A stretch of DNA of 64,000 nucleotides from Botryllus schlosseri (GCA_051294905.1 CM119386.1:806001-870000), one strand, 5' to 3'; counted from the first letter of the stretch, positions 44,701-64,000 are shown. Notes: generated by a model not told the origin, from the letters alone. Translations and numbers: made by a program.

Positions 44701-47700
44701 GTAATTCCGTCTCCGGTATAGTTTGTGTTGCATGTGCAGAAGTAGCTGCCAACCGTGTTGGTACAGACGGCATTGTTACGATCGCACGGGAAGGTAAAGC
44801 ATTCGTTGATATCAAAGCAGTCTTGGAAACCGCCCGCAAACCCTTCAGGGCAAGTACATATGGTCTGTCCGTTCTCAACACTGCATGTTGCATTTGCACC
44901 GCACGGATTATTATCACAAGGTTGTACTTCAATGCAATCTCCATTTTGTCCTGCGGTATATCCTTGCAAACATGTGCATTGATACGAACCGGGTGTGTTT
45001 ATGCAGTTAGAGTTTGCTCCACATGTACCATTGAATGCACATTCATCCTTATCTATGCAAGCATTAAGGATTTGATCATGCACGAATCCTTCTTTACAAT
45101 TGCACACAAAGCTTCCGAGCGCGTTGAGGCATGTTTCGTTTACACTGCAAGTATCAGTAGATTCTTGGCATTCGTTGATGTCAAAACAAGCTGTTCCTAA
45201 CAGACGGAATCCAGAATTGCAGTTACATTCGTAGCTACCATCTGTGTTGACACAAGACGCGTCATTTTGACACGGTGAGTTTAGGCATTCGTTAATGTCG
45301 AAACAGGAATCAATTCCATTTCCAAGGTAACCTTGTGGGCAGCTGCAGTACGTAATCTCGTTGCTTACAAAGCAATCCGCTTCGGGGAGACACGGGTTAG
45401 CAACTTGGCACGGATCAACTGGAATACAGAATCCATTAATCTCTCTGTAAGCTCCGTCACAAATGCATTGATACGATCCAGGTTGGTTTTCGCATCTGTA
45501 ATTTCCGTCACATGGTGAAGATGAGCATTCGTCGATATCTTCGCATATACTGGCATTGTTGCTAGGTTGATACCCGGAGATACATTGGCACGTGTAACTC
45601 CCAACAGTGTCCAGGCATGTCGCAAAATTACCGCATATTCCTTGCGTCGCGCATTCATTCGTGTTTAAGCAGTTTTCACCTGAATAGCCCTCCTGGCAAC
45701 GACACACATATGAGCCGAATGTGTCGACGCAATCAGCATTTTGTTGGCACGGATTATTGTCACATTCCAGAATGTCGATGCATGAATTGTTTTGATATTG
45801 CAATCCAGAAGCACATTTGCACGTTGCCAGCCCGTCTGTTTGATCGCAGAAGGCTAGTTGCGGACAGGTTATGTTTTCACAAGGATCAACTTGAGCACAA
45901 ATTTCACCATTGCCAAAGAATCCGTTATCGCATACGCATTCAAACCCTCCGTAAGTGTTGTAGCAACGTGCGTCGCTATCACACTGTGATGGTCTGACAA
46001 GCGCTGTTCTTCCGTTATATGTTACGTTACATTCACTTCCACATAATTGCCGGGTGACAGACACGTTTTCCCACGAAATAGACTCCAATACAATGTTGAC
46101 GGTAGTTTGACCGGTGCATTCGTTGAAGTCAGTGCACCATGTCACGCCATCTCCAACTGTACCACGTTGGCATTCGCACGCTCGTATTCCCACACCGTTT
46201 TGATCAATTCCTTTCAGCACACATTCAGCACTGTTTGCGAGACAGATGTCGTTTCCACAAAGCTCTGAAATAGGAAATGAAATTTAATGGTACTAATTCC
46301 TTGTATATATGATAAGAATTGAATAATATATTCCTATTGAAGTAATAGAGGTAATCGCGAGCGACTAGCAGAGAATTAGAAAGATCAAGTTCAATTTTAT
46401 ATTGACGTTGTGTACTACAATAGTCCCCAGAATCCGGCAAAAAGTTATTTTTGAACAACACTTAAGACCACCTCTGGACTTACTTCCCCACATTTTATGA
46501 AAGGATTACCCCAATTATTGCATAGCCAATTTGAAAAGTGATGACGTCTTGAAATAGGATGGAAAGTTTTAATCAAATCGACAGCTCAAACCTACCTTTG
46601 CAAGATCCATCCATTTCAGCGAAACCGAGATTGCATCTGCATGAGAACGAGCCTTGCGTATTCTCACAGTTAGAGTTTGGCGGGCACACAGCATCTTGTC
46701 CACTACATTCGTCGATATCTTCGCAGGTTCCATCGGTAAACCAATATCCTTGGTCACAATCGCAAGTGTATGACGTTCCTTCTATACGACAAATGCCGTT
46801 GAGTCCGCAATTATCTGGATTGCACGGAGTGATCGGGGCGCAATTATCTCCAATCCGTCCCTCTTTGCATTGACAGGTGTATTGTCCATTTGCCATATTG
46901 ATGCAGTCTTCGTTTGCTGTACACGGGCTGCTCGAACATGAGTCAAAGTCGCATGTCTCCCCATTTCCGATAAAGTTTTCGTTACATGCGCAGAAGTAAC
47001 TGCCGATTGTATTTGTGCAGTTAGCGTTTATATCACACGGAAAATCACGGCACTCGTTGATATCTGTGCATTCTTGGACGCCACCGCTGTATCCATCGGG
47101 ACAAGTACACCTGATTTGACCATTTTCAACGGAACATGTAGCGGTTGCACTGCATGGGTTTCCGTCGCATGGTAATACCTCTATACAGCCTCCATTTCCG
47201 TCATCTCTGTAATCTTGTGAGCATGTGCATTGGTATGACCCAGGTGTGTTATCACATTCCGCGTTAGCTCCACAAGTGCCGTTAAAAGCGCATTCGTTCC
47301 TATCGACGCAATCGTTTTGACTTTGACTTGTGACATATCCGTCTTTGCAGTTGCATGTAAAGCTTCCGATTGTGTTTAAGCAGTATTGTGTTGTAGTGCA
47401 ATCGTGGGAGCCCGTTTCGCACTCATTGATATCATTACATTCACCTCCAAATGAGAAAAATCCGGGATTACATTCGCACGTAAAACTGCCAGGTATATTT
47501 GTACAGTCAGCATTATTTGGACATGGTGATGAACTACATTCATCCACATCGGTACACGAATCTTTTCCGTTACCAGTAAATCCAGTAGGGCATATGCAGA
47601 ATGTATCATTGTGTGACACAACACATTCAGCTTGCTGTAAGCAAGGATTCACATCACGGCACGCATCGACTGGCACACAATCTTGATTGATTTCCCTGAA

Positions 47701-50700
47701 TATACCATCGCACACGCATTGATAACTGCCAGGTTCATTTTGACATCTGTAGTTTCCTGAACATGGGGACAACAACTGACATTCATCGATATCTTCACAT
47801 ATATCGGCATTTCCACTTGAAAAATACCCGTCCAAACATTGACATCTGTAACTTCCCGCAGTGTCTTGGCATCTTGCAAATTGTCCGCATATGTCGAAGT
47901 CTACACATTCGTCGATATTTTCGCAATTTTCCCCGGCAAAACCTCGATCGCAAGTGCAAAGATACGAGCCATACGTTTCGGTACAGTTGGAATTATCAGG
48001 ACACGGACTGGTTTGACATTCTTGTACGTCAACGCATGCACCGTTAAAATACCGTAGTCCTGGCGCACATTCACAAGTCGATACTCCTTGGTTTACGACA
48101 CAGATTGCGAATTGAGGACAGGTAATGTCTTGGCATGGATCCACAATGGAGCATATTTCGCCATCACCAAAGAAGCCTTCTTCGCATACGCATTCAGACC
48201 CTCCGAATGTATTGTAACAACGTGCGTTGTCACTGCATCTTGCCGGTGTGATTAACGCTGTTCTTCCGTTATACGTTATTATGCATTCGTTTCCGCATGA
48301 TTCTCTCGATATTGTGACATTTTCCCATGAAATGGATTCAAGCACAAAGTTGTTAGTGTTTCCACCGGTACATTCATTGAAGTCTAAGCACCATGTAACA
48401 CCGTCTCCAACAACACCATCAATGCATTGGCATCTATGAATCTGTTTTCCGTCGTTGTCATATCCTTGCGATACGCATTCAGCCACGTTGGCAAGACATC
48501 TGTCATCTCCGCATAGTTCTTTTAAAAACACAATTTTCAATATGAAGATTCATAGTTTCACGGATATCATGAATGAAAACTGACAACATTCATATACCAT
48601 TTGCACACCGAAGTGATTTGAAAATGAAAAGCAGTTGAATGGTAATGATGTGACAAAATTAAGACATAGCAAGATTGTAAGTGGTGCAAAATGTTATAAC
48701 GCATTATCAAGTTATTACTTGTAAACAGATGCGTGATCAAAAATGTTATTAGGTATTAAGAGCACAACTAAGGCCTACTGGTCAATCCAAGCAATAAAAC
48801 TATGTAGAAATCTCACAAACACATTTTAGTACGCTCACCATGTAATGATATTTTATCAATAAATAATTATTACTGGTTAATCCACACTGTAAAACTATGT
48901 AATCGGTAAAAAAGATGTTCAATGAAATCCCACAGACTGATTTTAGTACTCACACCAAGTTACATGTATTATAATAATATGATTATTAATAGTATTAACT
49001 GAAGACAGGAAAGCATCAAGTACAGTGCAGTGTGCACAATGCAAACATCTAAATTAACCACTGATCAAGCTGGAATATCCACGATAACCTACCAAAGTTG
49101 CACACCCAAAACTTGGCTTCAAGTATACCAGGGTCGATGTGTATTTACATCACACACAATTAAGGCAACTGGCACACACAAGGAATAGTACTCGCACAGT
49201 CAAGCGGTTACAAGAATTTTCAATTCCCCACATGAGAATTCTTTTGATTCTCCAACCATGGAATACAGTATTGGCAATGTTCTCAAACATACCCATCCAA
49301 AAGTGACATCATTAATATATTTACCTAAATATATATTACACGGTATAGACTGGGAGACCCGATATAACCGAAATCTTCAAGGCCGGAGTCATTCAAGTAT
49401 ATTTGGCGGTAATAATAATAATAATCAATTTCTTCCCTCATTGAAGTAGCAGAGCAAAAAGTGAGGAACCAAAACAAAATTAAACAAAGCAGAACAATAC
49501 TAATGAAGGAAAGAAAACTTGACAGGTTAAATAATTTATTACTTGAAGATCTTGTGTCAAATGCATAGCTGGTCAGTATGGAAGCGCTTCTAGTGCTTAC
49601 AAGAGTGCACCCAAGAATTTTGTTTCCTTCAGGCAAGCTACACCCTTTCCATTTATCAAGCAACATTTGCAACACTCACAAATACGAAATACCATTCATC
49701 CGCTCACACTCACAACATTACTCCCAAACAGCCATCAACAATAAGATAACCGTAATAGGAGACTCACCTGTGCAAACCCCGTCTACCTCTCTGAAACCAG
49801 GACTGCATTCACAGAAGTACGAGCCATCTGTGTTTCGGCAGGTTGCTCCAGGACCACACACCGCATTCTGTCCGTTGCATTCATTGATATCGCTGCATGT
49901 ACCGTTCGTGAACCAATAGCCTTGCTCGCAGTCGCACGCATAAGTTGTTCCCAATATCTGGCATATTCCGTTTGGCTCGCAAAAATTTGGGTTGCAAGGT
50001 GTGATAGTGTCGCAGTTATCTCCGTACCGTCCTGTCTTACATTGACACCTGTGCTGTCCGCCTATGATGTTGAAACAGTCTTCATTCTGTGTGCATGGGT
50101 TGGTTGAACAGGAATTGAAATCGCAGTTAAATCCGTCCCCGCTGTAGTTTTCTCTGCATGTGCAAGTGTATGTACCAGGAGAATTAACGCAATCGGCGTT
50201 GACATCACAGGGGAAGTTGAGACATTCGTTGATATCTGTACATTCTTGTATACCCCCTGTATATCCTTCACTGCATGTACACTTAGTCTGGCCGTTTTCC
50301 ACAGTGCATGTCGCGTCTGCGCTACAAGGATCATTATCGCATGGTAAAACTTCCACACAGATTCCATTATCATTTTCTTTGAAGCCATCCTTACAGCTAC
50401 ACCCGAAATTTCCAACCGTATTGGTACACAGCGAATTCTCCCCACAGACACCAAACACAGCGCATTCGTCTGTATCAATGCAGTCTTTACGGTCGTTGCT
50501 GTATTCAAATCCTGCTTTGCAGTTGCAGAGAAAGCTTCCGGGTGTGTTTAAACATGTTTGGTTTGAAGAGCAATCGTCAATACGCCTTTCGCACTCAGGT
50601 ATATCTCTGCATTGTCCTTGAATGAGTTCATATCCGGTATTGCATTCACAAGAGTAACTTCCATCCGTGTTTGTACACTGTGAGTTTTGTGGGCATGGAG

Positions 50701-53700
50701 AAGTTTGTAAGCATTCGTTGATATCAGTGCAATTGTCTCTTCCGTTGCCAGTATAACCCTCAGGACACAGACACACTGCGTCATCGTCAGCAACCACGCA
50801 TTCCGCTTCTTGAAGACATACTTCTGCGTCGTCACACGGTTGTACTTTTACACATTGATCGTCAATCATACGGAATTCACCGTCGCATATACATTCGTAG
50901 CTGCCTGGATTGTTTTCACATCTGTAATTCACACCACATACTGGAGACGTGCATTCATTGATATCTTCACACTGATTTCCGATTTTGCGGTATCCCGAGT
51001 TACATTCGCATATGTAACTTCCTTCCGTGTCCTTGCAAGTCGCATCATTTCCGCAAATTGTCGGGTTCAAACATTCATTTATGTTTACGCAGTCATCACC
51101 AAAGTATCCTTCAAGGCAGGCGCAACGGAACGAGCCGAATATTTCATCGCATTTCGCATTGGCTGGACAAGGATTGGTTTTGCATTCTTCAACGTCGATG
51201 CATGTGTTGTTGGAGTATCGCAGTCCGTTTGCGCATTCACAAATCGCAGATCCTCCCGTCCTTACGCATTGAGAAAGGTCTGGACAAGTTATCGCACTGC
51301 AAGGGTCGGTTTCAGTACATATTTCTCCATCCCCGTAGAATCCACTGATGCATGAGCATTCATATCCACCGTACTCGTTCAAGCATATCGCGTTATCACT
51401 GCAGTTTGCCGTTCTGACGGCAGCTGTTTGTCCGTTGTAAGTGATATTGCATTCACTGCCACACATTTCTCTTGACATGGAGACGTTTTCCGATGAGACA
51501 GTGTCCAGCACCAAGTTCAGCATGTTGAGACCGGAGCATTCGTTAAAATCAATGCACCAGTTAACACCGTCACCGATGGTGCCGTCCAGACAGTGACAGC
51601 TTTCGATTTTCTCTGCTTTCATATCATCGTATACAGAAATGCACTCAGCTTTGCTTGCTAGGCAGATGTCTTCACCACACAGTTCTGTAATGATACATGC
51701 GCTGTTGGTAATCAGAAGCATATTCTCAATGTATTCTAACACGAATTTGTAAAGCCTCAATGCTGTTAGTATATAATTAGGCAGTATGTTCATATTGAAA
51801 TAAACAGGAATAATCGTGAGCATGCTCTTAATATGATGTGTGGCATGATTACAGAGGCTTTTGAAGTAGTTGACAGTGATACTTGGTCAAAATAAATGTA
51901 ACGCCCAAATATTCTAGTCGATTTCAAGTGGAAGTACTGATTTCCGAGACATATCAAAATTTCTTCAATTGGAAGTAGCGCAAAACCTAATAAATACTAT
52001 GAAAAAGTAGAAATACTTCATTACTGACCACGTCTGGCCACTAAGGAGGTTCAAAAGGAACAGAACATTTTTAGTTTAAGGTAATAAAGACACCAAATGT
52101 TATGAAACTTTACAGTGATCCATTGATCCATCACTGACTTGTCGCTTTAACTTATTTCAATTAGTATTATTATTTCGATTTCAGTTACATATTGTAATCC
52201 TCTCAATGCAAGGAATTCCCGATACTTGGAGAGTGGAAAAAATGGTGGTGATGGTGATGATAAAGCATATTATATTGCTTGCACCAGACACTAACAAGCT
52301 CATTCGTTCTTTGAATCTAGATATACCTTTACAGAATCCATCCACATCACGGGAACCTTCAGGACAGTCACAAAAGAACGATCCTTCCGTGTTGAAGCAT
52401 TCATGATCGGACACGTTGCATTGTACAAACTTGCACTCGTCAATATCTGAGTTGATTTAAGAGTCAAATTCAATTCGATAATCAAAAACTGCAGTATGGC
52501 ACTTACCCTCGCATTCGAAAGTGATATCGCTGTATTGAAAGCCATCTGAGCAGTTCAAGGTCTAAACATGAAACGTTTACGTATCATTGAACTTGGTAGT
52601 AACTTGTAACTGTAAAGAATTGACCCAAAACTCTCCTTTTAATTCTAAACTAATTCCTGGTTTTCCTGAAAATGCTACTGGAGAGCTGCATAGTGCGAAA
52701 CGAGCCAAGTTCGCTGGGCAGACATTTCCCATTCTCGTGCTTATTTAAATAGATTCTGATTTCTTATGGAGTGAACTTGATTTTTGTTGTATTTCTTCCT
52801 AATTCGGAATTGAATTCAATTTCCAAGGTTTTCAGAATTATATAGTTCTAATTCTATTCTAATTTAGAAAATACTGTGTGGCTATGAAGCTAATTCTAAT
52901 CCAATTTCAAAACTTGAGCGTTTTAGTTGTCCAAATGTGATATTTATTTCTATACATCTTGTTTTGCTTTGTGTATCACTGAGTAAAAGCGATACAATTT
53001 ATATCTACCATCAGACACATAGGTTTGAATTCAGACTTACGCGGTTGGAGTCGGGAGCCACAGGTGGCGGTGGCGGTATGATAGTTGGCGGAGGAGGCGG
53101 GGGACAGATTGTCGGCTTGGTTTCATTGATTTCAAATGTTGGTGGTGGCGGCGGAAGCACTGGTGGTGGCGGTGGCACCGGAATCGTGCCGTTCTGAATA
53201 TACGGGTTACAAACACATTACAATGTATTTAAAATTGCCTAGGTCCTAGGTCATTGCACAGCAGCTCTAATTAGATGTGATACCAGCATGTGTAAAGTTT
53301 GTTAAATACCAATACTGAAAAACACTTGCACAATACCTACGGTTAGACAAACATATTATAATCCATAAGACTGCAAACTAATGACTTGAATTTTGACAAA
53401 TTGAATTATTTTCAGCGAATTACACAAGTAGGTTTTGTCTACCCGCACTACTTTCTCATGTTGTTAAGCTACTACTTCCACGGCTACTTGATTATTTTTT
53501 TTAGGCAAAACTAGGCCTACAACACATACTTTTTACTTACTTTGAAAGTACTAATTCTGCTTGAACTCAAGTAAAAATTTTAGATGTTGCTCACAAACCA
53601 GGGATCACCAACACGCAGCACGCATGCAGCCAGTGGCCTGATTTTAGATCTTCGGAGAACACTTAGTAAAGCATTCATAAATGCTGAAATTGATTTCAGC

Positions 53701-56700
53701 TTCAAAATATTGTTGCTGTGCTCAAGATCACTATTCCTCGCTAGCTGATTCGGCTTCTAAATCTAGGGAATTAGCTGATATGAATGGGCAATTGGGCATA
53801 TTGCCTTGACATATAATGTAATAGAGTCCCAAGAGCGAGGCACTTAGAAAACGACTTGATACTTCCCCACAAGATCAAGATTTACGAAGAGGCTAGTTTT
53901 CCAGCAACATTTCTAGCTAAACCCAATATCGTTCTTTAGTCTCTGAAAAGGGTTGTCAGGTATCATGTGCAGCTCATAGTTCAGACTAGAATGAAAGTGA
54001 CATAGCCTACCTGAGTAACAACAATAAGTATTCCGGCCCCCTCAAATTATTTTGATATTATTTACCACTTGTTTTTTCATATAGTGATGAGCTGGTACTA
54101 GATCAATTAGATCGGAGATTCTGTGCATAATGTGGTAAATTAGAGGCCTGGGACACTTACCTCATCCACAACAATGAAAGGAGGAGGAGGAAGCACAGGT
54201 GGCGGTGGTGGAGCAACTGAAATGGAAATTACAAAAGTATATATATATCGGTGTAGGCTACATACTGTTGAAGACGCATGCCGTCTGTAATATATATAAT
54301 CTGCGATTACTTAGGCGAGAATTATTGTTGCCATATTGTAGAAAGAGAAAATAGCTATCAAGCTTATAAAATGAAAATATCTCATCGGTGACAAGTGATG
54401 GATGATGTCACATTTGTGCATGGGTCGTTGAACTTGGTGGCTCGTATCAATTGAGTAAATTTATTACCTGCACTTCCGTCTTCTGTGAAGAATGGTGGAA
54501 TGGGAGGAAGCACCGGTGGTGGTGGAGGAGTAACTAAAATAAATATTCATGCTGATCTTGTTGGCATAGCTCATGGAGGATATCGTTATTGATATATATT
54601 AGGGTATAGCTTGACTAAAATCCGATACATGTTAGGACAATGTCAAAGGAATACCCTTGGTTTGATTTCTGCTAGCATAATTGATATCTACATAGTAAGC
54701 CACAATATATCCTTGGATTGATCCATCGCTATGAGCATAGTGCACGAAAAAATATAATAAATCATGTTGCATCACGTTTCTATTTCAGAGTTATAACCAA
54801 GCCCTATGGTTCCGAGTCACAAGTCAATTTGCCACATGTCAAACTTGAAGTGAATCAAGACTCGACCCATGAAGTACCAGTGTATATTGAGATGTAAACA
54901 CACATATATATGTCAAAATCTCTGGTTCAAAAACTCCTTACTCTCAACTTACAACTGGTTCAAGTCTACAAAATTCAAAGTCACCATATTGATTTATCAG
55001 GCAATTGAAATCTAAACTTTGTCATGGGTAGGTGATAAAAGATGACAAGTTTTACACCATCTTTTGTAAGACACCTGTATGTATCTATACAAAACCGTTA
55101 CCTGAAGATCCGTCTTCTGTGAAGAATGGTGGAATAGGGGGAAGCATTGGCGGTGGCGGTGGAGTAACTGTGAAATATTCAAATTAATGGTTATCTGATA
55201 GCCATAGACATGGATTCTGAGAGAAGAAATGCCGAGTTCGGGGTAACAATTTAAATCGTGGTAGCATTACAGCAAAATTTGGGAAGCCGCTGATTATAAA
55301 AGAGTAATCCCTTTCGACCAGCCCTATTCAACAAGACCCTACGGCCCTACAGTTGGCGAAATGTATTCAATATCTTATGACTAGAGAGAAGATCACTTTT
55401 GATGAAAATAAGACATAAATGAGGATGAAAATCAATAATAACGACACCGTGGTTTCACAAGCACAAAATCTTTAAAAATAAAGACAAGTCTTATAAGGAG
55501 AGTATGGAAACCATGTCTCTGCAATAAAGGGTGCACTTAACATTCAAGTTGACCAGAAGATCTATGGCAAACTCCAATTTAACGCCGATTCAATAATTCA
55601 AACTTTTATCACAATGCATTCTGAAATCACTCTGAACTATTCCAAAGATTCAAGTTAAATCATGTACAAATGCGCAATCAATGAATATGGTTTATCAATG
55701 CCTTTTTTCAACTCTCCTAATATATTAAGAACAGAAGTAAATGGAAATGATAATTAACAAAACAATAGATACCTGCATCGGTTTCCTCAAAGAGAGGAGG
55801 GAAAGGAGGGACCATCGGAGGAGGCGGAGGCGTTTCCACTGAAATATGTATATTGCATGATTTAGAACAATCACACAGTGTAAAACCAATTACCCCCGTA
55901 GACATGAAATTATTGAAAATGAGTGAATGACGTTGAAATCTGGAATGCCAGCTGCAAATTAATTTTAGGATGCATTCTGATGATGCTGACATATATTCAG
56001 CAGCAGTCGAGATATTGATGAAGGGTGAACACAAACAAACTCCTGTATGTACTCTGTGTGAACCATTAATCGACAGACAGATATACAAAAAGAAAACATC
56101 ACAAGCAGTTGTACAGCAACAATGAAACTGAAAAGACCATGTTCAATCCTGATATCAAATCAGAATGAGACTAGAATCTTTGCTTCGTTCAGGTAGATTT
56201 CATGAACACAACATTATATTTATCCGACGAATAGCATCCAAAAACGGATCAGATCAAAATCAACCAAATACAGAAATGATAAAAAAGATAGTCACAAAGC
56301 TACTTCTTACTTCCTGCATCAAATTCTTCCAGTATAGGAGGAAGAGGTGGTAGCATCGGTGGTGGAGGAGGTTTTCCAGCTAGGACAAAATTCATATCTC
56401 TTAAATGCCCTAAAGAATATGTTTTGGACCACAGCATGGTGATGATATGCCGGCAATGGAGTCCTTGTACAAAGATGTCAAGAAATATCATATCAAGAAT
56501 TTCAACGAAGATGCCATGATATTCTTCAGCAAACATTTTGTAACACAGCAAGTGTGTCATGGAAATCTGAAGATTCAGTTCCACTTATCACCAAATTAAG
56601 AGTTGCTCATAGTCCATGTGACATTGAAGACGTAAAGATGTAGCATGATAATAGTCTCAGTGTAATGTTCATGATACCTTCATCCTGAAATTCCTCCAAC

Positions 56701-59700
56701 ATTGGAGGTAACGGTGGCAACATCGGAGGAGGTGGTGGGGTCCCATCTACAAAAATATTTGAAAAAAAATGGAGACCTGATGGATCATGTAATCAATTAG
56801 ATTGAATGCCCCTTTCAACTCAGTCTACAGAATCATTATGACGCAAAGCAATAACTCCATATTGTTAATTTATTTACTAAAAACTTATCGACTGACTCTC
56901 ATCAGCAGCTAACGTAATAATACGGCGAGTCAAAATCGAAACTAGCGGCCAGTGACAGTGAATTTTCCATAGTTTCTCATGGTCATTCTCTTTTTCATTT
57001 GAAACTCCAGGAATCTACAAAAATGCCTATAACAATTCTCTGTCGCCGAAAGGAACACTTGGAACCCTACACTCTTAGAATATTTCATAATGTTCAGTTT
57101 TGTTATTTTCGGCTATTTATAACCGAATATGTATGTAACGATTATTGTGTACCACTGCACGACACTATCCAGTAGTAGTCAGTTATTGAATTGAATAGTA
57201 TATTCAGATTGAAATAAACCCGAATATTTTCGGCTGACACTTATCAGGGGTAATTGTCAGCAAATATAAGATAATTGAAACGGAGATTGTATGCCACACT
57301 TGTTCGTTATTGATATCATTTTGTCACAAAGACAAAATATTTTGTACATTTCAAATCTAATTCACTGTAATGACGTTTCCTAGTGATGAGAGTCAGTCAA
57401 AGCGCTCTTAATGAATAAATTAACAATACGAAGGTATTATTTTGCATAATTCTGAAGATATGTACCCAAAATAGCATGTTTGGAATTATTTATGCAATAC
57501 CTTCGTATTCTACTTCCACCAACATGGGAGGCAGAGGTGGTAACATTGGAGGAGGTGGTGGAGTCTCATCTATAAAATAATTTTGAGAAAAATGGATAGC
57601 AGCAGAGATCTTGACGGCCTTCGAGTTGGGTGTCCTTTAAACTCCGTCTATATCAGTGGTTCCCAACCTTTTTCGACTCATCGCCCCCTTTTGAAGCTCC
57701 ACACCGATCATCGCCCCCAAATATTGGGAACCGGAAAACAGCACTTCATCAGTCCCCCGAAAAAACGTTGATCTTTGGCCCCATAAGGTGATAAACCAAA
57801 CCACAGACCCCCCTCAGCCAGTTGGCTTTTTGTCGCTACATATCAGCTATACCCTATTTCGTGTACTGTTTGGTGAGTCACCGTATTTTGCCTAAACAGG
57901 TGAAGCGCGACAAATTTATATAATTCATGTTTGAATCGGTCAATATGGTCGATGTGGTATGTGGATTTGACCTCCTATATCTGCTATGTCAGAAGATATG
58001 GAACCAAACTAAATGACGCACATGATTTCATATTGGTATTTCTTTACTGGCAAATAACTTCTTCCTTGCGGGATGGCATTTGTCCTGTAGGGTTAAGGTC
58101 GCCAGGTGAGGGACATTCGACGCCAGCCATTGAGGCGCCTATGGACAAATAAACATATATGTATATCTATCGAAGTTTTGGGTCAGCACAGGGGCATTCC
58201 TTTTCGGCCAAGGTGTTCTCGATGCTGACCGTTCTGGCACACTTCTCGGAGTCGCATGTTACATGGCCTCTAACTTCATATCTTGGTACGTCGTGGCGCA
58301 GTATTGGCTAACGCCGAAGTCTCATATTACCACAAATCCTGCGTATTTTTGTTGGATGAGGCGGACCCCAACATCAAGATACATGAAAATATTAAATCGC
58401 GCCCAGCGCGAAATTTTTTTGAAAAAGTCGCATGAATTTCTAAAAAATTACTCTATCATTCATGTTAATTCACGAAATAATTTTGGGCTTTTTTCGATTT
58501 CGGGCCCCCCAGCCCTAATTAGGGGGTTCGGGGTGCGGTAATTACGGTCCCGACTCCAATATAGCCGATTTACCGCGCCATCGCCCCCCTATCGCCCCCT
58601 TCGTTGTTTTCGTCCCCTTGGTCTGTTTTCGCCCCCTTCGTTATTTTCGCACCCATAGACAGCCAAATCGCCCCCTGGGGGGCGATATCGCCCACGTTGG
58701 GAACCACTGGTCTATATGATCATTATTTCTGGAATACCTTCATATTCTAATTCCTCCAACATAGGAGGCAGTGGTGGCAACATCGGTGGAGGTGGTGGGG
58801 TCCCATCTACAAAAAAAAATTCGAAAAAAAAGGACTGCATAGAGATCTTCTGAATCATAGAAATGATTCTTATCAAATCATCATGGTTGCAATACCTTCG
58901 TACAGTAATTCCTCTAGCATGGGAGGAAGCGGAGGCAGCATTGGAGGTGGAGGCAGAGTTTCGACTGGAATGATATCACAAAATTCTTAGTATTGCAGGA
59001 AATCATGCGGCCACATGAAAAAATTGACGTGGAGCAAATTCTACTGTAAGAATTCTGCAAAAGTGCCGCCGATCAAGCTCGTACTGAAGTGAAGGGTGTC
59101 AGAGATTGACAAATAGTCCGAAAAGACGGATTCTTCAGTCTTCATTGGAAAAGGATAGCAGCAATAAGTCCCATCATAGCAAAGCAGCAAACATAACATT
59201 CTAGTAATCAAAGACGGAGAATACCAGTATACTCATTATTTCAGAGTATTATCACTGGAAAAGCAGTGAGAATATGTTCTCCGTAAAGGAAGAACTACAT
59301 TAATTAATCCATGAGATATTCCATGCAACACTCAAAAGCTGTAGATCGGAATCAAGTTCAAAACTTGATCGCATTAAACCCACTCAATTGCTGAATGCAG
59401 TAAGAAGAATCTCATTGAGATTTGAATGCTCCACAACTAAATGTCGTGATTCAACAAAACTCAGAGTTCCACTTGGCATTATATGTGAAATTGGAGAAAA
59501 GAAGCTTGTGAACAAATTATTTTGCGACAACAAAATCTAAAGAATTCGCTATAAGAATTGGTTCATCATAGCAATGTATCTCCAAGATGAGTAGGTTTCC
59601 AGTAACCTCAATCATCTCAAGACCCCGGAACCTTGGCAGCAGTTTTCATGGAGTGAAGAGATCAGGGTCGAGTAAATTTTGAGCAACAGCTAGGGAATTT

Positions 59701-62700
59701 CACGGATAAGCTTGCAGTTATTCGTTTCAACTCCGAAGAAAGAGTCAGAAGCAAAGAAGTCTTCTATCTCTCCATTGCATGAAAATATTCAACTACAGCG
59801 GCGATAGACAGCTTGAGTCAAGAGTAGGCACCACATTAGCCACTGACTCTAAGAATGACTGTACCGTCGCGAGCATCCAAGTGTCACTACTCAGCCTTGG
59901 CACAAGACGTATTCCAGCGAAATTGCTACATGCAACTAACTCGTTACCTACTATACATTACCTTCTTCCACATCCTCTCCTATCATAATCGGAGGAGGAG
60001 GTGGGATTGTGGGGGGAGGTGGTATATAGTCTGAAAATTTCGTTAACTATGGATATCGATATATTTCAATTAGAGACCATCAGCATTCTGCACGCCGGAG
60101 TATCGCCAGCCACTGATACCAGACATGGACAACTACATAATATTAGTTGTGTATATAGACCAATAATAATGAAATGTTGGTAATCTAATTAATTTGCAAA
60201 ATGTTTCTATGCTCTAATTGTAATTCTAGTACATTTTCCATTTGAATAATGCGAAACAGGCCAAGCTTAGAGTACAAGTATTTGTTTTTCTCATGCTTAC
60301 GAGGATGAGCTCCAATTTTATATGAACTGGACCTGATTTTTGGTGTACCTCTTTGTAATTCGGAATTTAGTTCAATATCCAAGTGTTTGCTTTTCAGTAA
60401 ATCTAATTTGAAACCAAAATTCTAATTCCAATCTAATTTGGAAAATATTTTCTAGTTGTCCAGCAAACCAAAAAGGTGGCCGAGTCCACGAGGCTTGAAA
60501 GTCAAATGTTATTTATAAATTTATTTACCTTGGTGTCGAAACGATTAATTAAAATAGTAGGCTCATCATCTAGTTGTTAGATATGTTCCTAAATTACCAT
60601 CTGTTATCTCTTCCATCGGAGGTGGCGGTGGTGGTGTCGGTGGTGGTGGTGGAGTTGTACCTGGGTAATTTCAAGATGGAATAAGTTTACTGAGTTTTAA
60701 AAAGTTTTACATATTACTTTTGATGTCAAAATTCATCATGATTACAAGCATATATGTATCAAAACATGCACACGCGTTACTGCACACAAAACAAACAATG
60801 TATGATTCTCAGCATCCATAGTAGTATGTACTATGTTCCATGTGACGGTCTGCAATCTTTGACCAGAAGATGAAAGTTAAGCATGAAATGTATGTTAGTT
60901 ACCTTCAATCAATTCCTCAGACTCAAACAGCAATGGAGGAGGCACCGGCGGTGGTGGTGGGACGAAATCAGCTGGACCATGCAAACAAATGTTATTCAAA
61001 ATCCATGCAGTAACAAAAATTCAGGTACGGTAGGGTTATTTTCAGACACTTCAAACGCAAGCTCCTCAGTGACATTTCTGGTTCTAGACAATCCGTCCAT
61101 CAAATATTTAACAATTTTATATCTCAATTGCAAAATGCAAGATGTTGGACACTTATTAGAAAAATGCAACATCAAATGTTAAATGGATATAGAAATTTGG
61201 AATGTTTTTCTGCTTTGCGTTGTAATATAGAGTCCATCTGTAAATGCTGCACTTTTCTACAATTTGTGTAATACAAGTCGAATGTGAAAGAATTTTAGTA
61301 CAACATTCCTTAAATTTTGCGAAATTTGACAGAAATCAGCATCGCTTTCAAGAGAAACTGAACAATCAAAATCAAATAATTTGGCTTTAGCAAGGCATAG
61401 CTTCACAGAAACTTCAATAGAACCATGTATAATATGTGTACGTACGTACATGCATACATTTGTCGTAATTACATTTTGGGTTGAGAACCATATTCTCGGC
61501 TAATTTCACTTTGTTCGGTAAAGCGTGTTTTATCTTGCAGTAGAATGGCAAGTTGGCATATCATATGGTAAAATGCGATCAATCTACTTGGTAGGGTAAA
61601 TGGTTTGTTACCTTCCGACATTTCTTCGAACTCGAATGGTGGAGGTGGGACCATTGGAGGAGGCGGAATCACAGTAACTGAATATGATTGGTTAGTTAGC
61701 CACAAGCATGCATGGATGAAAGAATGAACATTCCGCAAGTGCACAACACAACACATATTAATAATCTATCGAACAATTGACTGGCCAATTATGGACTTAT
61801 AAATTGGGCTAGGCACAATGATTTGAGTACGAGAGTCTGAGTCGCGTGTATCAATTCGAATTATTCACATCCAGTAGCGACAGATGATTTTTTATTACTG
61901 AAGTTACATCATCATCATCCATTAACAATAATACCACATAAAAACCACACCTACAATAATAGTGACAAATTTCAGATATCACAACTTTAAACTGATAAAG
62001 ATTTGCCAGGATACGGAAATTGTAATACGTAGGAACATAAATACCTTCTTCCAACTCCATGATGTCAAAAGGAGGTGGTGGTGGAATTGGTGGCGGAGGA
62101 ATGAGCGATTCTAAGAGCGTCAACAGGAATTTCATTGACAAATTTGGCAAATATTACAATTCTAGCACGATTTTAGCACCTCTTACTCTGATTCTGTAGT
62201 TTGATACCGTAGTTCTTACTCAAACTGACATAGTTTGACATTTATGAACGTACATTGGGGTTTTCCGCAAATTTACAGTACGGACAAATCTTGCAGAGTT
62301 TATTCAGTCGGAGTCAACACACCAAATAAACCAGTTTATTCTAAAACACATCATTCTTGAATATCGCCAATCATATTTGTTAGTAGAAGTTATCGAACAA
62401 CCATTCACGGTAATTGTCACGTTCATGTTAGAAAGCGTGATTTGTCAAATCCGTTATTTGACAAATATTTCTATTGTGTCTATATATAGATAGTTATATC
62501 TATATACGTATATAGTTTTTCTGTATAATTATAATTACATATGCAGTTATCTCACCTTCCTCTTCCATCTCTTCATATGGGGGTGGCGGTGGGACCATTG
62601 GCGGAGGGGGTACGGTCGATGCTGAAACATTATTATTTGTTTCAAAGAATTGACCATCGTTCATCAAATTTAGCCTCATACTTCACTACAAACAGGCAAA

Positions 62701-63613
62701 TTCTAGACTGGGACAGCTAGTTAATAATTATAGCGAAATGCTGGTAACCTAAATCTAATTTAATTTGTGGAATGTTTATGTCTTCAAATTTTAATTCTAA
62801 TCTAACTCTGGTTTTCTTATGAAGCTAGCCATGTTTGGTGTACAGGCATTTGTCGTAGTTATGCTTATGAGGATGAACTCTTGATTTGATATGAACTAAG
62901 CTTGCTTTTTGTAAAGTTTCTTTTTACTTCCGAATTTCATTCCTTTTCCGAGTCTTTGTGAATTCAGAAATACTAATTCCAATTTTATTTCAAAAACAAC
63001 TCTGTAGCTATAACTCCAATTTGGTGAAGCTTAAAACTATCTAGCTATCTAACTCTGCTAAGTTCACTGCTAAACAAGGTAATGAAACATAGTTACTTTC
63101 ATCCTCTGGTGGTGGTGGAGGCGTAATCGGTGGTGGCGGAACCACTGTTGTGGCTGAAATTAATATGTTCTTTCAATATCAAGCTCAAATATGATTTTCT
63201 GCTACTACATCAAGTGCTTATGACTTCACCAGCCAAGGCTGTGTCAACATAAGGAGTTTGTGTACCTTTTAAAAATAGTACATTGAACGCTCTCTTATTC
63301 AAAATTTCATGCTGGTGACGTCATATTTTGTGATATGATCGTTGATATACAATGCTATCTCCAATTCTCTACTAGTTGCTGACGATTACCCTTGACGAGT
63401 GTCAGCCTAAAATATTTGGGTTCATTTCAATATGGATGTACTAGGCAATTTTTAATTACAACAAAGTAGGTCACAGAATAATTTGAAAAGGAATTTGCCC
63501 CAAGACTACAAAACATGGTTTAGTAGTATCATGATATAAATGCTCACCGTTCTTTTCCTCTCCCGGGGGAGGAGGTGTAGGCGGCGGCGGTGGCGGAACC
63601 GTGATATTGGTCA
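2540..63613 (-). CDS. Giant multi-exon type I membrane mucin-like protein (polyPro repeats - ~80 EGF - NIDO - AMOP - VWD - FN3x3 - PTS mucin - SEA - EGF - TM); 5' end outside window
   Basis: About 74 exons bounded by AG/GT (one inferred GC donor), with compatible phases at each junction I traced. Domain motifs are recognisable in the spliced translation. Summed exon length is about 20 kb (~6,700 aa). Confidence 0.85.
2815..3092. repeat. Interspersed repeat family B (TTCTAA/AATTAG-rich, 250-450 bp; representative copy)
   Basis: Core gaaaatgctac.ggagaactg..tagtgcgaaacgagccaag...gtacagacatttg. Copies at ~2815, 19745, 34725, 52620, 60185 and 62700 share one orientation; the copy at ~40030 is inverted. 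Confidence 0.72.
3095..4354 (-). CDS. Two juxtamembrane EGF exons (4222-4354 cbEGF; ~3095-3270 EGF)
   Basis: DFNECLDSSDNNCHAYATCTNADPGYTCSC and CELDGGSYCLNGATC...CSCAAFYLGRRC. The second exon's acceptor is uncertain (3270 or ~3250, both phase 2). Confidence 0.8.
4822..5977 (-). CDS. Cys hairpin exon (5933-5977) and SEA domain exons (5071-5183, 4822-5014)
   Basis: TCSSFQANFNGVCQ, then FFTSTIVIRRTDITFNTSLEDRNSAYYKETVLLFQNT / TSTLFRTSFDVSVITSEIYTFTSGSVVGTSDV. This matches the SEA pattern F..L.D..S..Y and the GSVV motif. Phases 1-1, 1-0, 0-1. Confidence 0.8.
6903..11096 (-). CDS. 4,194-bp Thr/Ser-rich mucin (PTS) exon, 1,398 codons
   Basis: Lies within the 1421-aa ORF 6847-11112. Acceptor TGGTCAG at 11097-11098 and donor CCCG/GTAATC at 6902, both phase 1. 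Degenerate ~17-aa repeats of the type TSxPATTSGQATES. Confidence 0.88.
11559..11978. mobile_element. hAT-type MITE (420 bp) with GACTCGA(G/A)T subterminal motifs
   Basis: TIR TAGGGCTG...CAGCCCTT and perfect 8-bp TSD GTTATAAC (11551-11558, 11979-11986). Related decayed copies at ~16100-16400, 17830-18080, 20906-21360, 27360-27880, 38060-38160, 54800-54880 and 63770-64000. Confidence 0.8.
12022..13603 (-). CDS. Two small Thr-rich mucin exons (13466-13603, 12022-12339)
   Basis: FVASTTLDTTTTTTGPVTTTTTTTD... and SPTTSTSASATVE...STTPESTTPETTTPES. Both phase 1-1, with lengths divisible by 3 (138 and 318). Confidence 0.8.
14242..14701. mobile_element. Solo LTR (460 bp) nested in a non-autonomous DNA element
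   Basis: Termini TGTAAC...GCTACA, 5-bp TSD CCCAC at 14237-14241 and 14702-14706. Removing it restores ggattacccac-(c/a)gtccaggctat, as in the uninterrupted copy near 33560. Confidence 0.8.
14990..18224 (-). CDS. Three fibronectin type III domains in 7 exons (18125-18224, 17571-17680, ~17105-17235, 16894-16977, 16618-16723, 15886-16029, 14990-15103)
   Basis: FN3 motifs FIYVTWSKP / SLNFDTEYTISMQSVY; ITSLESATSYTFEAVC; AKINWTAP..DYQIQF / DLALDTNTVISVFSLN. Phases consistent. Confidence 0.78.
15421..15802. mobile_element. hAT-type MITE (382 bp)
   Basis: TIR TAGGGTCACCATA...TATGGTAACCCTA and perfect 8-bp TSD TGTAAAAT (15413-15420, 15803-15810). The same right terminus recurs at ~25860-25875. Confidence 0.82.
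18772..23091 (-). CDS. Tandem (cb)EGF block, 9 exons (22902-23091, 22104-22296, 21396-21518, 20729-20851, 20269-20397, 19527-19639, 19328-19444, 19003-19152, 18772-18942)
   Basis: Repeated D(I/V)(N/D)EC...C.N..GS(Y/F).C.C..G(Y/F) consensus, with canonical splice sites in compatible phases. Confidence 0.88.
21083..21132. repeat. Short 11-bp tandem repeat (ttaacagtttc)x4
   Basis: Directly visible in the sequence. Confidence 0.7.
23792..24922 (-). CDS. Ig/cadherin-like linker between VWD and EGF block (24764-24922, 23792-23970)
   Basis: PPAWVTNITEIEVQVGESFTFTIEA...IDPATGIFTWTPTDN...VIFMATADG...VKLCDCSNNGSC, which resembles the region after VWD in invertebrate NIDO-AMOP-VWD-EGF mucin-like proteins. 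Confidence 0.7.
25503..29058 (-). CDS. von Willebrand factor type D domain and C-terminal extension, 7 exons (28955-29058, 28772-28859, 27924-28043, 27163-27330, 26343-26522, 26067-26218, 25503-25620)
   Basis: IGDPTFQTWDGNSYSFSAVGEYHLI, KGLYGFYDDNATNDF, FGSSWIVYENESLFNY...FTPIY: MUC4/SUSD2/mesh-type VWD motifs. Confidence 0.85.
28100..28175 (+). mobile_element. tRNA-derived SINE head or tRNA pseudogene
   Basis: A-box TGGCGCAGTGG (28107-28117) and B-box GGTTCGATTCT (28150-28160) at tRNA spacing. The acceptor and anticodon stems do not pair well. Confidence 0.55.
29170..29781. mobile_element. Non-autonomous hAT element (612 bp)
   Basis: TAGGGCGATTTT...CACCCTA termini, 8-bp TSD CTCATGAC. Internally colinear with 32455-33239. 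Confidence 0.82.
29893..32368 (-). CDS. AMOP domain, 4 exons (~32242-32368, 32105-32178, 30916-31024, 29893-30069)
   Basis: C..W...EASP-ICPPT, CFQKS...GAICCYG, GGQLVRYH, DICCQTRELCDLYKEKRPS follow the AMOP cysteine pattern. The donor at 32242 is inferred from phase and intron length. Confidence 0.8.
31272..31904. mobile_element. Foldback MITE (~630 bp, arms ~290 bp)
   Basis: 31272-~31562 is the reverse complement of ~31625-31904, flanked by the direct repeat (A)ATGGACA. Related partial copies at ~215-450, 2030-2290, 3455-3800, 14010-14900, 22360-22820 and 33290-33750. Confidence 0.8.
32455..33239 (-). mobile_element. hAT deletion derivative (785 bp) retaining the transposase C-terminal dimerisation segment
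   Basis: Decayed left TIR, right TIR AAAAATTCGCCCTA, 8-bp TSD CTAATCAG. Minus ORF 32670-32906 reads ...TAAAIERSFSVLGKLLSKDRQFLPENV, matching the hAT C-terminal ERxFS motif. Confidence 0.82.
33879..37716 (-). CDS. NIDO domain region, 5 exons (37584-37716, 36052-36260, 35360-35508, 34461-34662, 33879-33991)
   Basis: FVFGGRSYDRFYILFNGAIVL, ISPFYAD, ITITWENM, DTFQLVLTTDGSVTYAFFLF, NAGKLGVFGY: nidogen G1/NIDO consensus. Confidence 0.85.
34141..34430. repeat. Minisatellite, ~35-45-bp units (tagttctagttctagttgca.attttgaaaagtgag)
   Basis: About 7 degenerate tandem units, with a second shorter array at ~39175-39355. Confidence 0.75.
36740..37473 (+). mobile_element. 5'-truncated CR1/L2-clade LINE 3' end
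   Basis: ORF 36887-37186 (HSHYTRSSSKGNIYLP...SIDYSVPIIWNALPPHIRE...FKKALFDHLL) matches the CR1/L2 ORF2 C-terminus. It is followed by a 3' UTR, AATAAA and a (CT)n tail. A similar tail occurs at ~35295-35325. Confidence 0.78.
37791..40459 (-). CDS. EGF block, 7 exons (40328-40459, 39828-39950, 39447-39613, 38938-39020, 38750-38877, 38350-38459, 37791-37920)
   Basis: For example DVNECETEGLCGANAECMNVFGSYICEC and DINECQNADACPASGSLCVNREPGYICTC. Phases chain correctly. Confidence 0.85.
41727..43646 (-). CDS. Giant EGF exon D (1,920 bp, 15 EGF modules)
   Basis: Within ORF 41656-43674. Acceptor CTTTACAG, donor CAAG/GTTGCT, phase 1-1. Confidence 0.9.
44345..46264 (-). CDS. Giant EGF exon C (1,920 bp, 15 EGF modules)
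   Basis: ORF 44316-46220 extended upstream to acceptor TATTTCAG. Donor AAAG/GTAATA, phase 1-1. Confidence 0.9.
46596..48518 (-). CDS. Giant EGF exon B (1,923 bp, 15 EGF modules)
   Basis: Within ORF 46573-48540. Acceptor TTTTAAAAG, donor AAAG/GTAGGT, phase 1-1. Confidence 0.9.
49768..51684 (-). CDS. Giant EGF exon A (1,917 bp, 15 EGF modules)
   Basis: Within ORF 49718-51823. Acceptor CATTACAG, donor ACAG/GTGAGT, phase 1-1. Confidence 0.9.
52327..52561 (-). CDS. Linker exon (52507-52561) and cbEGF exon (52327-52446)
   Basis: TLNCSDGFQYSDITFECE / DIDECKFVQCNVSDHECFNTEGSFFCDCPEGSRDVDGFCK. Phases 0-1 and 1-1 connect the polyPro exons to exon A. Confidence 0.78.
53041..63613 (-). CDS. Array of 18 polyproline/acidic micro-exons
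   Basis: 63548-63613, 63097-63153, 62556-62621, 62045-62110, 61612-61677, 60903-60971, 60598-60660, 59962-60030, 58896-58964, 58738-58806, 57501-57569, 56678-56746, 56311-56379, 55773-55838, 55102-55167 and 54468-54533 are all phase 1-1 and 57-69 bp. 54161-54216 is phase 1-0 and 53041-53193 is phase 0-0 (double unit). All are AG/GT bounded, for example DGTPPPPPMLPPLPPMLEEFQDE. Confidence 0.82.
57654..58709. mobile_element. hAT (Charlie/Buster-like) non-autonomous element (1,056 bp)
   Basis: 14-bp perfect TIR CAGTGGTTCCCAAC/GTTGGGAACCACTG, 8-bp TSD GTCTATAT, clustered ATCGCCCCC subterminal repeats at both ends. A lone similar TIR occurs at 63682. Confidence 0.9.
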
Positions 63614-64000
63614 CTGGAGAAATAACTGCATGTTGAATGTGATCTATCATTTGCATAAAACAGGATAGTCTACAATAGGTTCAGTGGTTCTAAACCTTTT
63701 TAGCTTGGGAAGAGTAAGATTTCGGCAAAAATTTTACCGGTCAGTAAACCTTCGTACATCAAAATCAGAATTCTAATGACTCGGGTGATGAGTCAAAACG
63801 AATCGGACTCGATTCGCAATTTTTAGTTGACTCGAGTCATTTACTTAAGAACGGAATGTGTCTCGACTTGACTCAATTTGTGAACAGTCAACACGTTGCT
63901 CCCTAATTTGAACTCGAACTTGACTAGATGGTGAATTGAAAATGATTCGACTAGATGAAATAAAATTGACTTGAGACTTGAAACCTTGTGGCTTGGTTAC

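What the first reader, a model, noticed from the sequence alone, without database searches (positions are those of the whole stretch)
53041..63613. Array of 18 micro-exons, each encoding one PPPPP-x-PP-x-PP-acidic unit
Seen: 16 symmetric 57-69-bp exons plus two phase-converting exons that splice in frame into the EGF region. N-glycosylation sequons (NIT, NGT, NET, NRT) within or beside the units argue for an extracellular location. Established: such sequences form polyproline-II rods; extracellular ones (extensin, minicollagen) are hydroxylated, while cytoplasmic Pro-plus-acidic repeats (FH1, ActA) bind EVH1/profilin/SH3 domains. Inference: a one-exon-one-repeat, length-tunable rod with Ca-binding acidic joints. 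These exons are absent from, or only partly covered by, the ORF track and would probably be missed by annotation.
Basis: partly seen in the sequence, partly recalled or inferred. Interest (0 to 1): 0.72.

Follow-up and report, generated by a model that had tools for sequence, protein, structure and literature searches.

The report
Spliced polyproline micro-exon array, extracellular
A run of 18 tiny exons, each coding one proline-rich unit, is real, is spliced in series into a giant EGF- and mucin-type membrane protein, and probably acts as an outside-the-cell spacer whose length is set by exon skipping.

Summary
On the minus strand, 53041-63613 holds 18 exons with 19 polyproline units. Sixteen are phase 1-1 exons of 57-69 bp. 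A 56-bp exon (phase 1 to 0) and a 153-bp exon (0 to 0, two units) follow. All have AG/GT borders and join into one open frame of 424 aa: 42% Pro, net charge -63.

RNA contigs from three studies show nine exact GT..AG joints. These link the ten 3'-most exons to each other, to exon 52507-52561 and to the cbEGF exons. One contig skips one unit.

The host gene spans more than 86 kb and is collinear with Styela clava LOC120328603. That protein has a signal peptide, about 30 cbEGFs, NIDO, a mucin region and one transmembrane helix. It carries about 19 units at the same position. Nearly all differences among 15 of its RefSeq isoforms are whole units present or absent.

So the array is extracellular, one exon per repeat, and length-variable by cassette splicing. 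The rod shape, Ca binding and hydroxylation remain untested, and acidity is much weaker in Styela. I class it as an extracellular counterpart of titin's PEVK design in an uncharacterised gene.

The parts
63548..63613 (-). Array exon 1, 66 bp, phase 1-1: TNITVPPPPPPTPPPPGEEKN (NIT sequon; NAT forms at the join to exon 2)
   Evidence: AG/GT borders and frame. Matches the first unit of the Styela array by tblastn. No RNA laid here.
63097..63153 (-). Array exon 2, 57 bp, phase 1-1: ATTVVPPPPITPPPPPEDE
   Evidence: AG/GT borders and frame. No RNA laid here.
62556..62621 (-). Array exon 3, 66 bp, phase 1-1: TSTVPPPPMVPPPPPYEEMEEE
   Evidence: No RNA laid here.
62045..62110 (-). Array exon 4, 66 bp, phase 1-1: ESLIPPPPIPPPPPFDIMELEE
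   Evidence: No RNA laid here.
61612..61677 (-). Array exon 5, 66 bp, phase 1-1: VTVIPPPPMVPPPPFEFEEMSE
   Evidence: No RNA laid here.
60903..60971 (-). Array exon 6, 69 bp, phase 1-1: ADFVPPPPPVPPPLLFESEELIE
   Evidence: No RNA laid here.
60598..60660 (-). Array exon 7, 63 bp, phase 1-1: GTTPPPPPTPPPPPPMEEITD
   Evidence: No RNA laid here.
59962..60030 (-). Array exon 8, 69 bp, phase 1-1: DYIPPPPTIPPPPPIMIGEDVEE
   Evidence: No RNA laid here.
58896..58964 (-). Array exon 9, 69 bp, phase 1-1: VETLPPPPMLPPLPPMLEELLYE
   Evidence: No RNA laid here.
58738..58806 (-). Array exon 10, 69 bp, phase 1-1: DGTPPPPPMLPPLPPMLEELEYE
   Evidence: No RNA laid here.
57501..57569 (-). Array exon 11, 69 bp, phase 1-1: DETPPPPPMLPPLPPMLVEVEYE
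   Evidence: The 3' border is fixed by RNA joint 56379>57501 in run X2, the form that skips exon 12. Borders and frame.
56678..56746 (-). Array exon 12, 69 bp, phase 1-1: DGTPPPPPMLPPLPPMLEEFQDE. Skipped in one RNA contig.
   Evidence: RNA joint 56379>56678 in X1. It is bypassed by joint 56379>57501 in X2.
56311..56379 (-). Array exon 13, 69 bp, phase 1-1: AGKPPPPPMLPPLPPILEEFDAG
   Evidence: RNA joints 55838>56311 and 56379>56678.
55773..55838 (-). Array exon 14, 66 bp, phase 1-1: METPPPPPMVPPFPPLFEETDA
   Evidence: RNA joints 55167>55773 (X1, X6) and 55838>56311 (X1).
55102..55167 (-). Array exon 15, 66 bp, phase 1-1: VTPPPPPMLPPIPPFFTEDGSS
   Evidence: RNA joints 54533>55102 (X1, X2, X6) and 55167>55773.
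54468..54533 (-). Array exon 16, 66 bp, phase 1-1: VTPPPPPVLPPIPPFFTEDGSA
   Evidence: RNA joints 54216>54468 (X1, X2) and 54533>55102.
54161..54216 (-). Array exon 17, 56 bp, phase 1 to 0: VAPPPPPVLPPPPFIVVDE
   Evidence: RNA joints 53193>54161 (three studies) and 54216>54468.
53041..53193 (-). Array exon 18, 153 bp, phase 0 to 0, two units with NGT and NET sequons and one Cys
   Evidence: RNA joints 52561>53041 and 53193>54161 in X1, X2 and X6. 62% identical to Styela residues 1645-1684.
52507..52561 (-). Connector exon, 55 bp, phase 0 to 1: TLNCSDGFQYSDITFECE (two Cys; the NRT sequon forms at the join)
   Evidence: RNA joints 52446>52507 and 52561>53041 in three studies.
52327..52446 (-). 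cbEGF exon, 120 bp, phase 1-1. It leads on to the first giant 15-EGF exon (49767-51684).
   Evidence: Pfam EGF_CA, 3e-07. RNA joint 52446>52507, and loose ends at 52327 that read into the giant exon.

Best explanation
The array is an internal, extracellular, proline-rich spacer of a giant type-I membrane protein. That protein has many calcium-binding EGF domains, NIDO and VWD-like modules, a mucin domain, one transmembrane helix and a short tail.

Each 57-69-bp exon codes one unit. A unit has two short polyproline blocks split by one or two hydrophobic residues (typically PPPPP-M-L-PP-L-PP), followed by a hydrophobic-acidic tail.

All 16 small exons are phase 1-1, and each ends in G or A. Any subset can therefore be skipped without a frameshift or a stop codon. 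Cassette splicing thus sets how many units, of about 2-7 nm each, separate the distal EGF/SEA part from the membrane-proximal part.

Shown: the exons, their serial splicing into the EGF region, the extracellular context, conservation in a second ascidian, and unit-wise isoform variation.

Inferred: that the polyproline blocks adopt stiff polyproline-II segments; that the Thr/Ser-Pro starts and the terminal sequons are glycosylated; and that spacer length matters for adhesion or matrix anchoring.
For: - Exon anatomy and one continuous frame.
- Nine exact CT..AC (GT..AG on the minus strand) joints, in contigs from three separate studies. One 5,088-nt contig runs on beyond the laid stretch towards the giant EGF exons.
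- One contig joins 56379 to 57501 and so skips exon 56678-56746. The ends of the two exons share no 30-mer, so a de Bruijn chimera is unlikely.
- No possible skip creates a stop codon.
- Flanking exons are EGF_CA. NIDO and VWD fragments, a 1,421-aa exon with 41% Ser+Thr, and a transmembrane segment lie downstream.
- tblastn shows the gene collinear with Styela clava XP_077970402.1 from residue 73 to 4194, with the array at the same place.
- Among 15 Styela isoforms, all length differences but one are whole units of 20-23 aa or multiples of them, up to 279 aa.
- Selection: among the central exons, synonymous codon differences match or outnumber non-synonymous ones in all ten pairs, while intron flanks are at background identity.
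- All four RNA-versus-genome differences in array exons are synonymous.
- AlphaFold gives no helix or strand across the Styela array, while the adjoining EGFs fold.
Against: - No RNA was laid on the eight 5' exons (58738-63613), and the join to upstream exons is only inferred.
- The runs are labelled 'RNA?' by guess, although intron-less joints can hardly come from DNA.
- Skipping in this genome rests on one low-depth contig (depth 4.4, 28 nt on the short side). It could instead be an allele that lacks the exon.
- The Styela isoforms are Gnomon models. Near-identical units could cause some false junctions.
- Stiffness, glycosylation and any role of length are untested.
- Acidity and the Tyr context are not conserved between the two species.
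Confidence: 0.65

Rival explanations
1. The array is an entropic spring, not a stiff spacer. In this reading it is an extracellular counterpart of titin's PEVK segment, extending under load and recoiling, with splicing setting its compliance.
For: It shares the PEVK gene design: one short symmetric exon per Pro/Glu-rich repeat, with cassette splicing. AlphaFold predicts a disordered chain. The host is a very long membrane-anchored EGF protein, of a kind that bears tension in other animals (own knowledge of Dumpy and MUA-3).
Against: Runs of 4-7 consecutive Pro are stiffer than PEVK sequence. No force data exist. This rival overlaps the best explanation and differs only in mechanics.
Confidence: 0.2
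2. The array is a multivalent docking site. In this reading the conserved PPPP-M-hydrophobic-PP core is a ligand for an extracellular partner, such as a matrix or tunic component or a lectin-like receptor, and splicing sets the valency.
For: Met plus a hydrophobic residue between two Pro blocks is kept in most units of both species, although the tails have diverged.
Against: No partner is known. The motif could be kept only to break long Pro runs.
Confidence: 0.1
3. The array is neutral filler. In this reading it is a tandemly duplicated linker under little constraint, and its splice variation is noise.
For: Central units are far more alike within a species than between species, which fits recent duplication or homogenisation. 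The tails evolve fast.
Against: About 19 units are kept at the same position in two distant ascidians. Every frame and splice site is intact. Synonymous changes match or exceed non-synonymous ones, and introns have fully diverged.
Confidence: 0.04
4. The array is a cytoplasmic FH1/ActA-type ligand for profilin, EVH1 or SH3 domains.
For: The PPPPPxLPP motifs resemble FH1 and EVH1 ligands (own knowledge).
Against: The exons are spliced between cbEGF exons on one RNA. They lie N-terminal to the only transmembrane helix. No FH2 domain is present.
Confidence: 0.01

Closest known systems
Titin PEVK region
   Same: One short symmetric exon per Pro- and Glu-rich repeat. The repeats sit in a long tandem array, exon skipping sets the segment length, and the structure is polyproline-II/coil rather than a fold.
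   Different: PEVK is intracellular (sarcomere) and Lys-rich, and it lacks runs of 4-7 Pro. Here K+R is 1% and P+E+V+K is about 60%. There is no sequence homology, and the host here is an extracellular EGF/mucin protein.
Styela clava LOC120328603 (XP_077970402.1 and at least 34 other isoforms), uncharacterised
   Same: It is the collinear orthologue. It has a signal peptide, cbEGFs, about 19 Pro units at the same position, NIDO, a mucin region and a transmembrane helix. Its isoforms differ by whole units. The terminal units and the flanking sequons correspond to those here.
   Different: Its units read xTISPPPMFPPPPPFGLDD and are much less acidic. The best match to the 15-EGF module lies before the array in Styela, whereas here four giant copies follow the array.
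Plant extensins and other hydroxyproline-rich glycoproteins
   Same: Extracellular repeats of Ser/Thr followed by Pro4-5, thought to form polyproline-II rods.
   Different: Extensins are basic, have YxY cross-link motifs, usually lack introns, and depend on plant prolyl hydroxylases and arabinosylation. None of this was shown or found here (there is no YxY).
Drosophila Dumpy and C. elegans MUA-3/MUP-4
   Same: Giant membrane-anchored proteins of EGF arrays that link an epithelium to an outer matrix. Dumpy also has a spliced Pro-rich repeat region. The top EGF hit is named 'mua-3-like'.
   Different: Their accessory domains differ (DPY, ZP, LDLa, VWA). Their Pro-rich parts are long repeats, not one micro-exon per unit.
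MUC4-type transmembrane mucins
   Same: NIDO, a VWD-like module, EGF, a Ser/Thr-rich giant exon, and a single transmembrane helix.
   Different: Pfam found no AMOP domain. There are dozens of cbEGFs, and MUC4 has no polyproline array.
Formin FH1, ActA and zyxin proline motifs
   Same: Similar local motif (PPPPPxLPP).
   Different: Those are cytoplasmic. This array is extracellular by topology.

Membership tests
PEVK-type spliced spring (by design, not homology) | One short exon per repeat, with symmetric phases | tested here: met
   16 phase 1-1 exons of 57-69 bp.
PEVK-type spliced spring (by design, not homology) | Differential exon inclusion changes the segment length | tested here: met
   Unit-wise isoforms in the Styela orthologue. 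One skip contig here. The evidence in this genome is thin.
PEVK-type spliced spring (by design, not homology) | At least about 70% P+E+V+K, with Lys-rich PPAK repeats, in a sarcomeric protein | tested here: not met
   P+E+V+K is about 60% and K is 0.7%. The protein is extracellular.
Formin FH1 / EVH1-ligand region | Cytoplasmic location next to an FH2 or other cytoskeletal domain | tested here: not met
   Spliced between cbEGF exons and N-terminal to the only transmembrane helix.
Extensin-like hydroxyproline-rich glycoprotein | Repeated Ser-Pro(3-5) motif | tested here: inconclusive
   [ST]PPP occurs 10 times in 19 units here, all as Thr. It occurs 6 times in Styela, mostly as Ser.
Extensin-like hydroxyproline-rich glycoprotein | YxY cross-link motifs and a basic character | tested here: not met
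   No YxY. Net charge is -63.
Extensin-like hydroxyproline-rich glycoprotein | Hydroxyproline and O-glycans on the Pro/Ser blocks | not testable with these tools
   Needs mass spectrometry of the native protein.
Mucin PTS domain | Ser+Thr above about 25-40%, usually in one large exon | tested here: not met
   Ser+Thr is 8.7% in the array. The gene's true PTS exon is 6850-11112, with 41% Ser+Thr.
Collagen / minicollagen | Gly-X-Y triplets | tested here: not met
   Gly is 2.4%, with no triplet period.
MUC4-like transmembrane mucin (host gene) | NIDO, AMOP and VWD, then EGF and a transmembrane helix, plus a PTS domain | tested here: inconclusive
   NIDO is met (window 9.5e-06; Styela 3.7e-19). 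VWD scores just under the cutoff (21.8 against 22.9 bits). AMOP was not found. EGF, the transmembrane helix and the PTS domain are present.

The most novel reading that the evidence does not exclude
The array could be an animal counterpart of plant extensins. In this reading it consists of glycosylated, perhaps hydroxylated, polyproline rods on a membrane-anchored protein. These rods would tie the ascidian epidermis to its cellulose-containing tunic, and up to 2^16 in-frame splice combinations would set reach or valency. That would be a convergent cell-wall protein solution in the only animals that make cellulose.
Probability: 0.06. Interest if true: 0.85.

Novelty: new variant of a known kind. 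Interest (0 to 1): 0.55.

Why it matters
Spacers whose length is set by splicing, with one exon per repeat, are textbook for titin inside muscle cells. A polyproline version on the outside of the cell, inside a giant EGF/mucin adhesion protein, appears not to have been described. Two literature searches and an accession search found nothing on this gene.

The array offers a simple, testable system. It has 16 interchangeable in-frame cassettes, conserved between two ascidians, with dozens of modelled isoforms. It could show how cells tune the reach or mechanics of a surface protein. It also shows that micro-exon arrays of this kind can be recovered from RNA-guided annotation.

Tried and rejected
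- Word-based protein searches used the Styela array (residues 1270-1720) and its NIDO-VWD part (2150-2900). Both returned only the query itself. The length window and low complexity limit these searches, so a blank says little about other tunicates.
- An exact look-up of the Styela protein's genomic locus found nothing. Its exon structure could therefore be inferred only from the isoform blocks.
- Among the 150 best matches to a giant EGF exon, only the Styela protein carries a Pro array.
- The one other genomic match to the PPPPM[L]PP pattern, on contig C1, is an unrelated Pro-rich coding stretch and not an array.
- No tRNA or Rfam family lies in 52000-64000.
- TGCATG and other splicing-factor motifs are not enriched beside the exons.
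- AlphaFold on the Styela array gave no fold: mean pLDDT was 54, and 40-55 across the array.
- Tyrosine sulfation looked attractive, with five Tyr in acidic contexts here. The contexts are not conserved in Styela, so I dropped it as a core feature.
- A second read-laying run for 57500-63650 was not possible because the cap is one call.

Full report
**Observation.** A six-frame scan for P(3+)-x(1-3)-P(2+) found 19 units. All are on the minus strand and all lie between 53062 and 63596. None occur elsewhere in the window or in the 30 kb fetched upstream of it.

Each unit lies in a short open stretch with a pyrimidine tract plus AG on one side and a GT donor on the other. This gives 16 phase 1-1 exons of 57-69 bp, from 63548-63613 down to 54468-54533. 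They are followed by a 56-bp exon (54161-54216, phase 1 to 0) and a 153-bp exon with two units (53041-53193, phase 0 to 0). Next come the 55-bp connector 52507-52561 (phase 0 to 1) and a 120-bp cbEGF exon (52327-52446).

Joined together, these read as one frame. The array itself is 424 aa: 41.7% Pro, 67 Asp+Glu against 4 Lys+Arg, and one Cys. The only change is that 18 exons carry 19 units.

The strict coding pattern for PPPPM[L]PP occurs seven times in the 495-Mb genome. Six of these are in the array, and the reversed control gives none. The seventh is an unrelated Pro-rich coding stretch.

**RNA evidence.** One read-laying run was allowed, on 52150-58100, using contigs from three studies plus one raw-read run. 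The contigs show exact intron removals with CT..AC ends, which are GT..AG on the minus strand:
- 52446>52507
- 52561>53041
- 53193>54161
- 54216>54468
- 54533>55102
- 55167>55773
- 55838>56311
- 56379>56678

The first three joints appear in all three studies. One 5,088-nt contig carries exons 54161-54216 and 53041-53193 and the cbEGF exon, then runs on beyond the laid stretch. Loose ends at 52327 read the start of the first giant EGF exon.

One X2 contig joins 56379 directly to 57501 and so omits exon 56678-56746. The relevant exon ends differ too much for an assembly chimera. However, the depth is low, and an allele without the exon cannot be excluded.

The raw-read run gave no coverage of the exons in the 6% of it that was sampled. 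They rest on splice sites, on frame, and on the equal unit count in the orthologue.

**The gene.** Beyond them are more EGF exons, NIDO and VWD fragments, and a 1,421-aa open exon with 41% Ser+Thr. A last EGF pair and a transmembrane segment with a basic stop-transfer sequence at 2543-2788 complete the gene. Upstream, cbEGF exons continue to at least 86 kb in extended window coordinates.

An exhaustive HMMER search with a giant exon returned mostly generic multi-EGF proteins. One of them, XP_077970402.1 of the ascidian Styela clava (LOC120328603, uncharacterised, 4,273 aa), carries a Pro array. Its layout, from N- to C-terminus, is:
- signal peptide
- cbEGFs and a SEA-like stretch
- more cbEGFs
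- about 19 Pro units at residues 1285-1686
- cbEGFs
- NIDO
- a VWD-like part
- more cbEGFs
- a Ser/Thr-rich region
- EGF
- one transmembrane helix and a short tail

tblastn places its residues 73-4194 collinearly along the minus strand, from 86131 to 3102. The array falls at the same position. The array is therefore internal and extracellular. The organism of the window is not given. That the only clear orthologue is an ascidian suggests the window is from a tunicate.

**Splicing as a length switch.** Fifteen of the 35 Styela isoforms in the cluster were aligned. Every length difference except one 9-aa block falls in residues 1285-1606 and removes whole units. The removed blocks are 20, 21 or 22 aa, or multiples of units up to 279 aa. 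The block borders have the same register as the exons here: a few residues before the first Pro run, through the tail. They are 60-66 nt in size.

In this genome every small exon ends in G or A. No combination of skips can therefore make a stop codon. These are Gnomon models, and some near-identical units could mislead read mapping. Several of the skipped units, however, are unique in sequence.

**Evolution and constraint.** Exons are up to 87% identical to each other, while their intron flanks are at background identity. Among the five central exons, synonymous codon differences match or exceed non-synonymous ones in all ten pairs. All four differences between RNA contigs and the genome inside array exons are synonymous.

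Central units resemble each other far more than any Styela unit (0.73-0.95 against 0.42-0.52). The terminal units match about equally well across species, and the last unit matches the last Styela unit best. This points to an old array with lineage-specific turnover in its middle.

Features conserved between the species:
- two Pro blocks split by Met plus a hydrophobic residue
- a hydrophobic start to the tail
- the period of about 20-23 residues
- N-glycosylation sequons only at the two ends

Features not conserved:
- the strong acidity (-63 against -21)
- the acidic context around Tyr

**Mechanism.** From established knowledge, runs of four or more Pro favour the polyproline-II helix, at about 0.3 nm per residue. 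Thr or Ser before Pro is a preferred site for mucin-type O-glycosylation.

AlphaFold predicts no helix or strand and low confidence over the Styela array, while the next EGFs fold. This fits an extended, non-globular segment but cannot tell a rod from a coil.

The best reading is a semi-rigid, probably glycosylated spacer whose unit number is chosen by cassette splicing. It sits between distal and proximal modules of a very long membrane-anchored adhesion or matrix protein. A softer, spring-like behaviour is the main rival. A docking role for the conserved PPPP-M-hydrophobic-PP core is possible. A cytoplasmic FH1-like role is excluded by topology. Calcium binding by the tails and prolyl hydroxylation are untested, and the weak conservation of acidity speaks against the first being essential.

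**Comparison and novelty.** By gene design the closest known case is titin's PEVK region, but that is intracellular, Lys-rich and unrelated in sequence. Extensins share the extracellular Ser/Thr-Pro4 theme but fail the YxY and charge tests. Mucin PTS and collagen definitions are not met.

The host gene resembles MUC4 (NIDO, VWD-like, EGF, transmembrane helix, PTS) and, in spirit, Dumpy and MUA-3. No AMOP domain was found. No paper on the Styela gene or on such an array turned up.

I class it as a new variant of a known kind: an extracellular, polyproline, one-exon-per-unit cassette spacer. The claim that annotation would miss it does not hold in general, since RefSeq models capture the Styela array.

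**Limits.**
- Eight exons lack RNA support.
- Alternative splicing in this genome rests on one contig.
- The first exons and the signal peptide of this gene were not located.
- The expressing tissue is unknown.
- All physical properties are inferred.

Noticed in passing
L003:2041-2103 (window-extended 66041-66103), minus strand: Candidate extra 63-bp phase 1-1 micro-exon, ITTPVPVTTTPESVTETASN, with AG/GT borders, 2.4 kb upstream of the array. Joined to exon 63548-63613 it would create an NVT sequon next to NIT. This mirrors 'TTPTTNVTIV' before the Styela array. No RNA evidence.
   Followed up: partly
window 41659-51886 compared with P0029 residues 708-1284: The four giant 15-EGF exons follow the Pro array here. 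Their best match in the Styela orthologue lies before its array. This suggests the module moved or expanded independently.
   Followed up: no
window 63227-63450: Interspersed repeat of about 220 bp with more than 50 copies at about 90% identity across the genome. Copies often occur as close inverted pairs, which is MITE-like.
   Followed up: no
window 57125-57323 and 57654-58100 (introns of the array): RNA contig depth runs into the thousands, with many loose ends at 57654 and 57718. This is a common repeat (it begins CAGTGGTTCCCAAC; a related copy lies near 58700) that is transcribed from many loci, not part of this gene's exons.
   Followed up: partly
L004/L005, window-extended 89772-91604, minus strand: 611-aa open frame resembling a transposase-derived zinc-finger protein. 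It starts ...KKRKYVNSYIEYGFICV...CVLCDKVL...HLQNVH. It lies upstream of, or inside an early intron of, the giant gene.
   Followed up: no
window 53125, 53161, 55136, 57535: Differences between the RNA contigs and the genome inside array exons are all synonymous (N>N and three P>P). They are probably alleles.
   Followed up: yes
window 53792 and 53543-53940: Intron between exons 17 and 18 shows moderate contig depth in X2 and a 1-nt deletion variant. This is probably another repeat or retained intron sequence.
   Followed up: no
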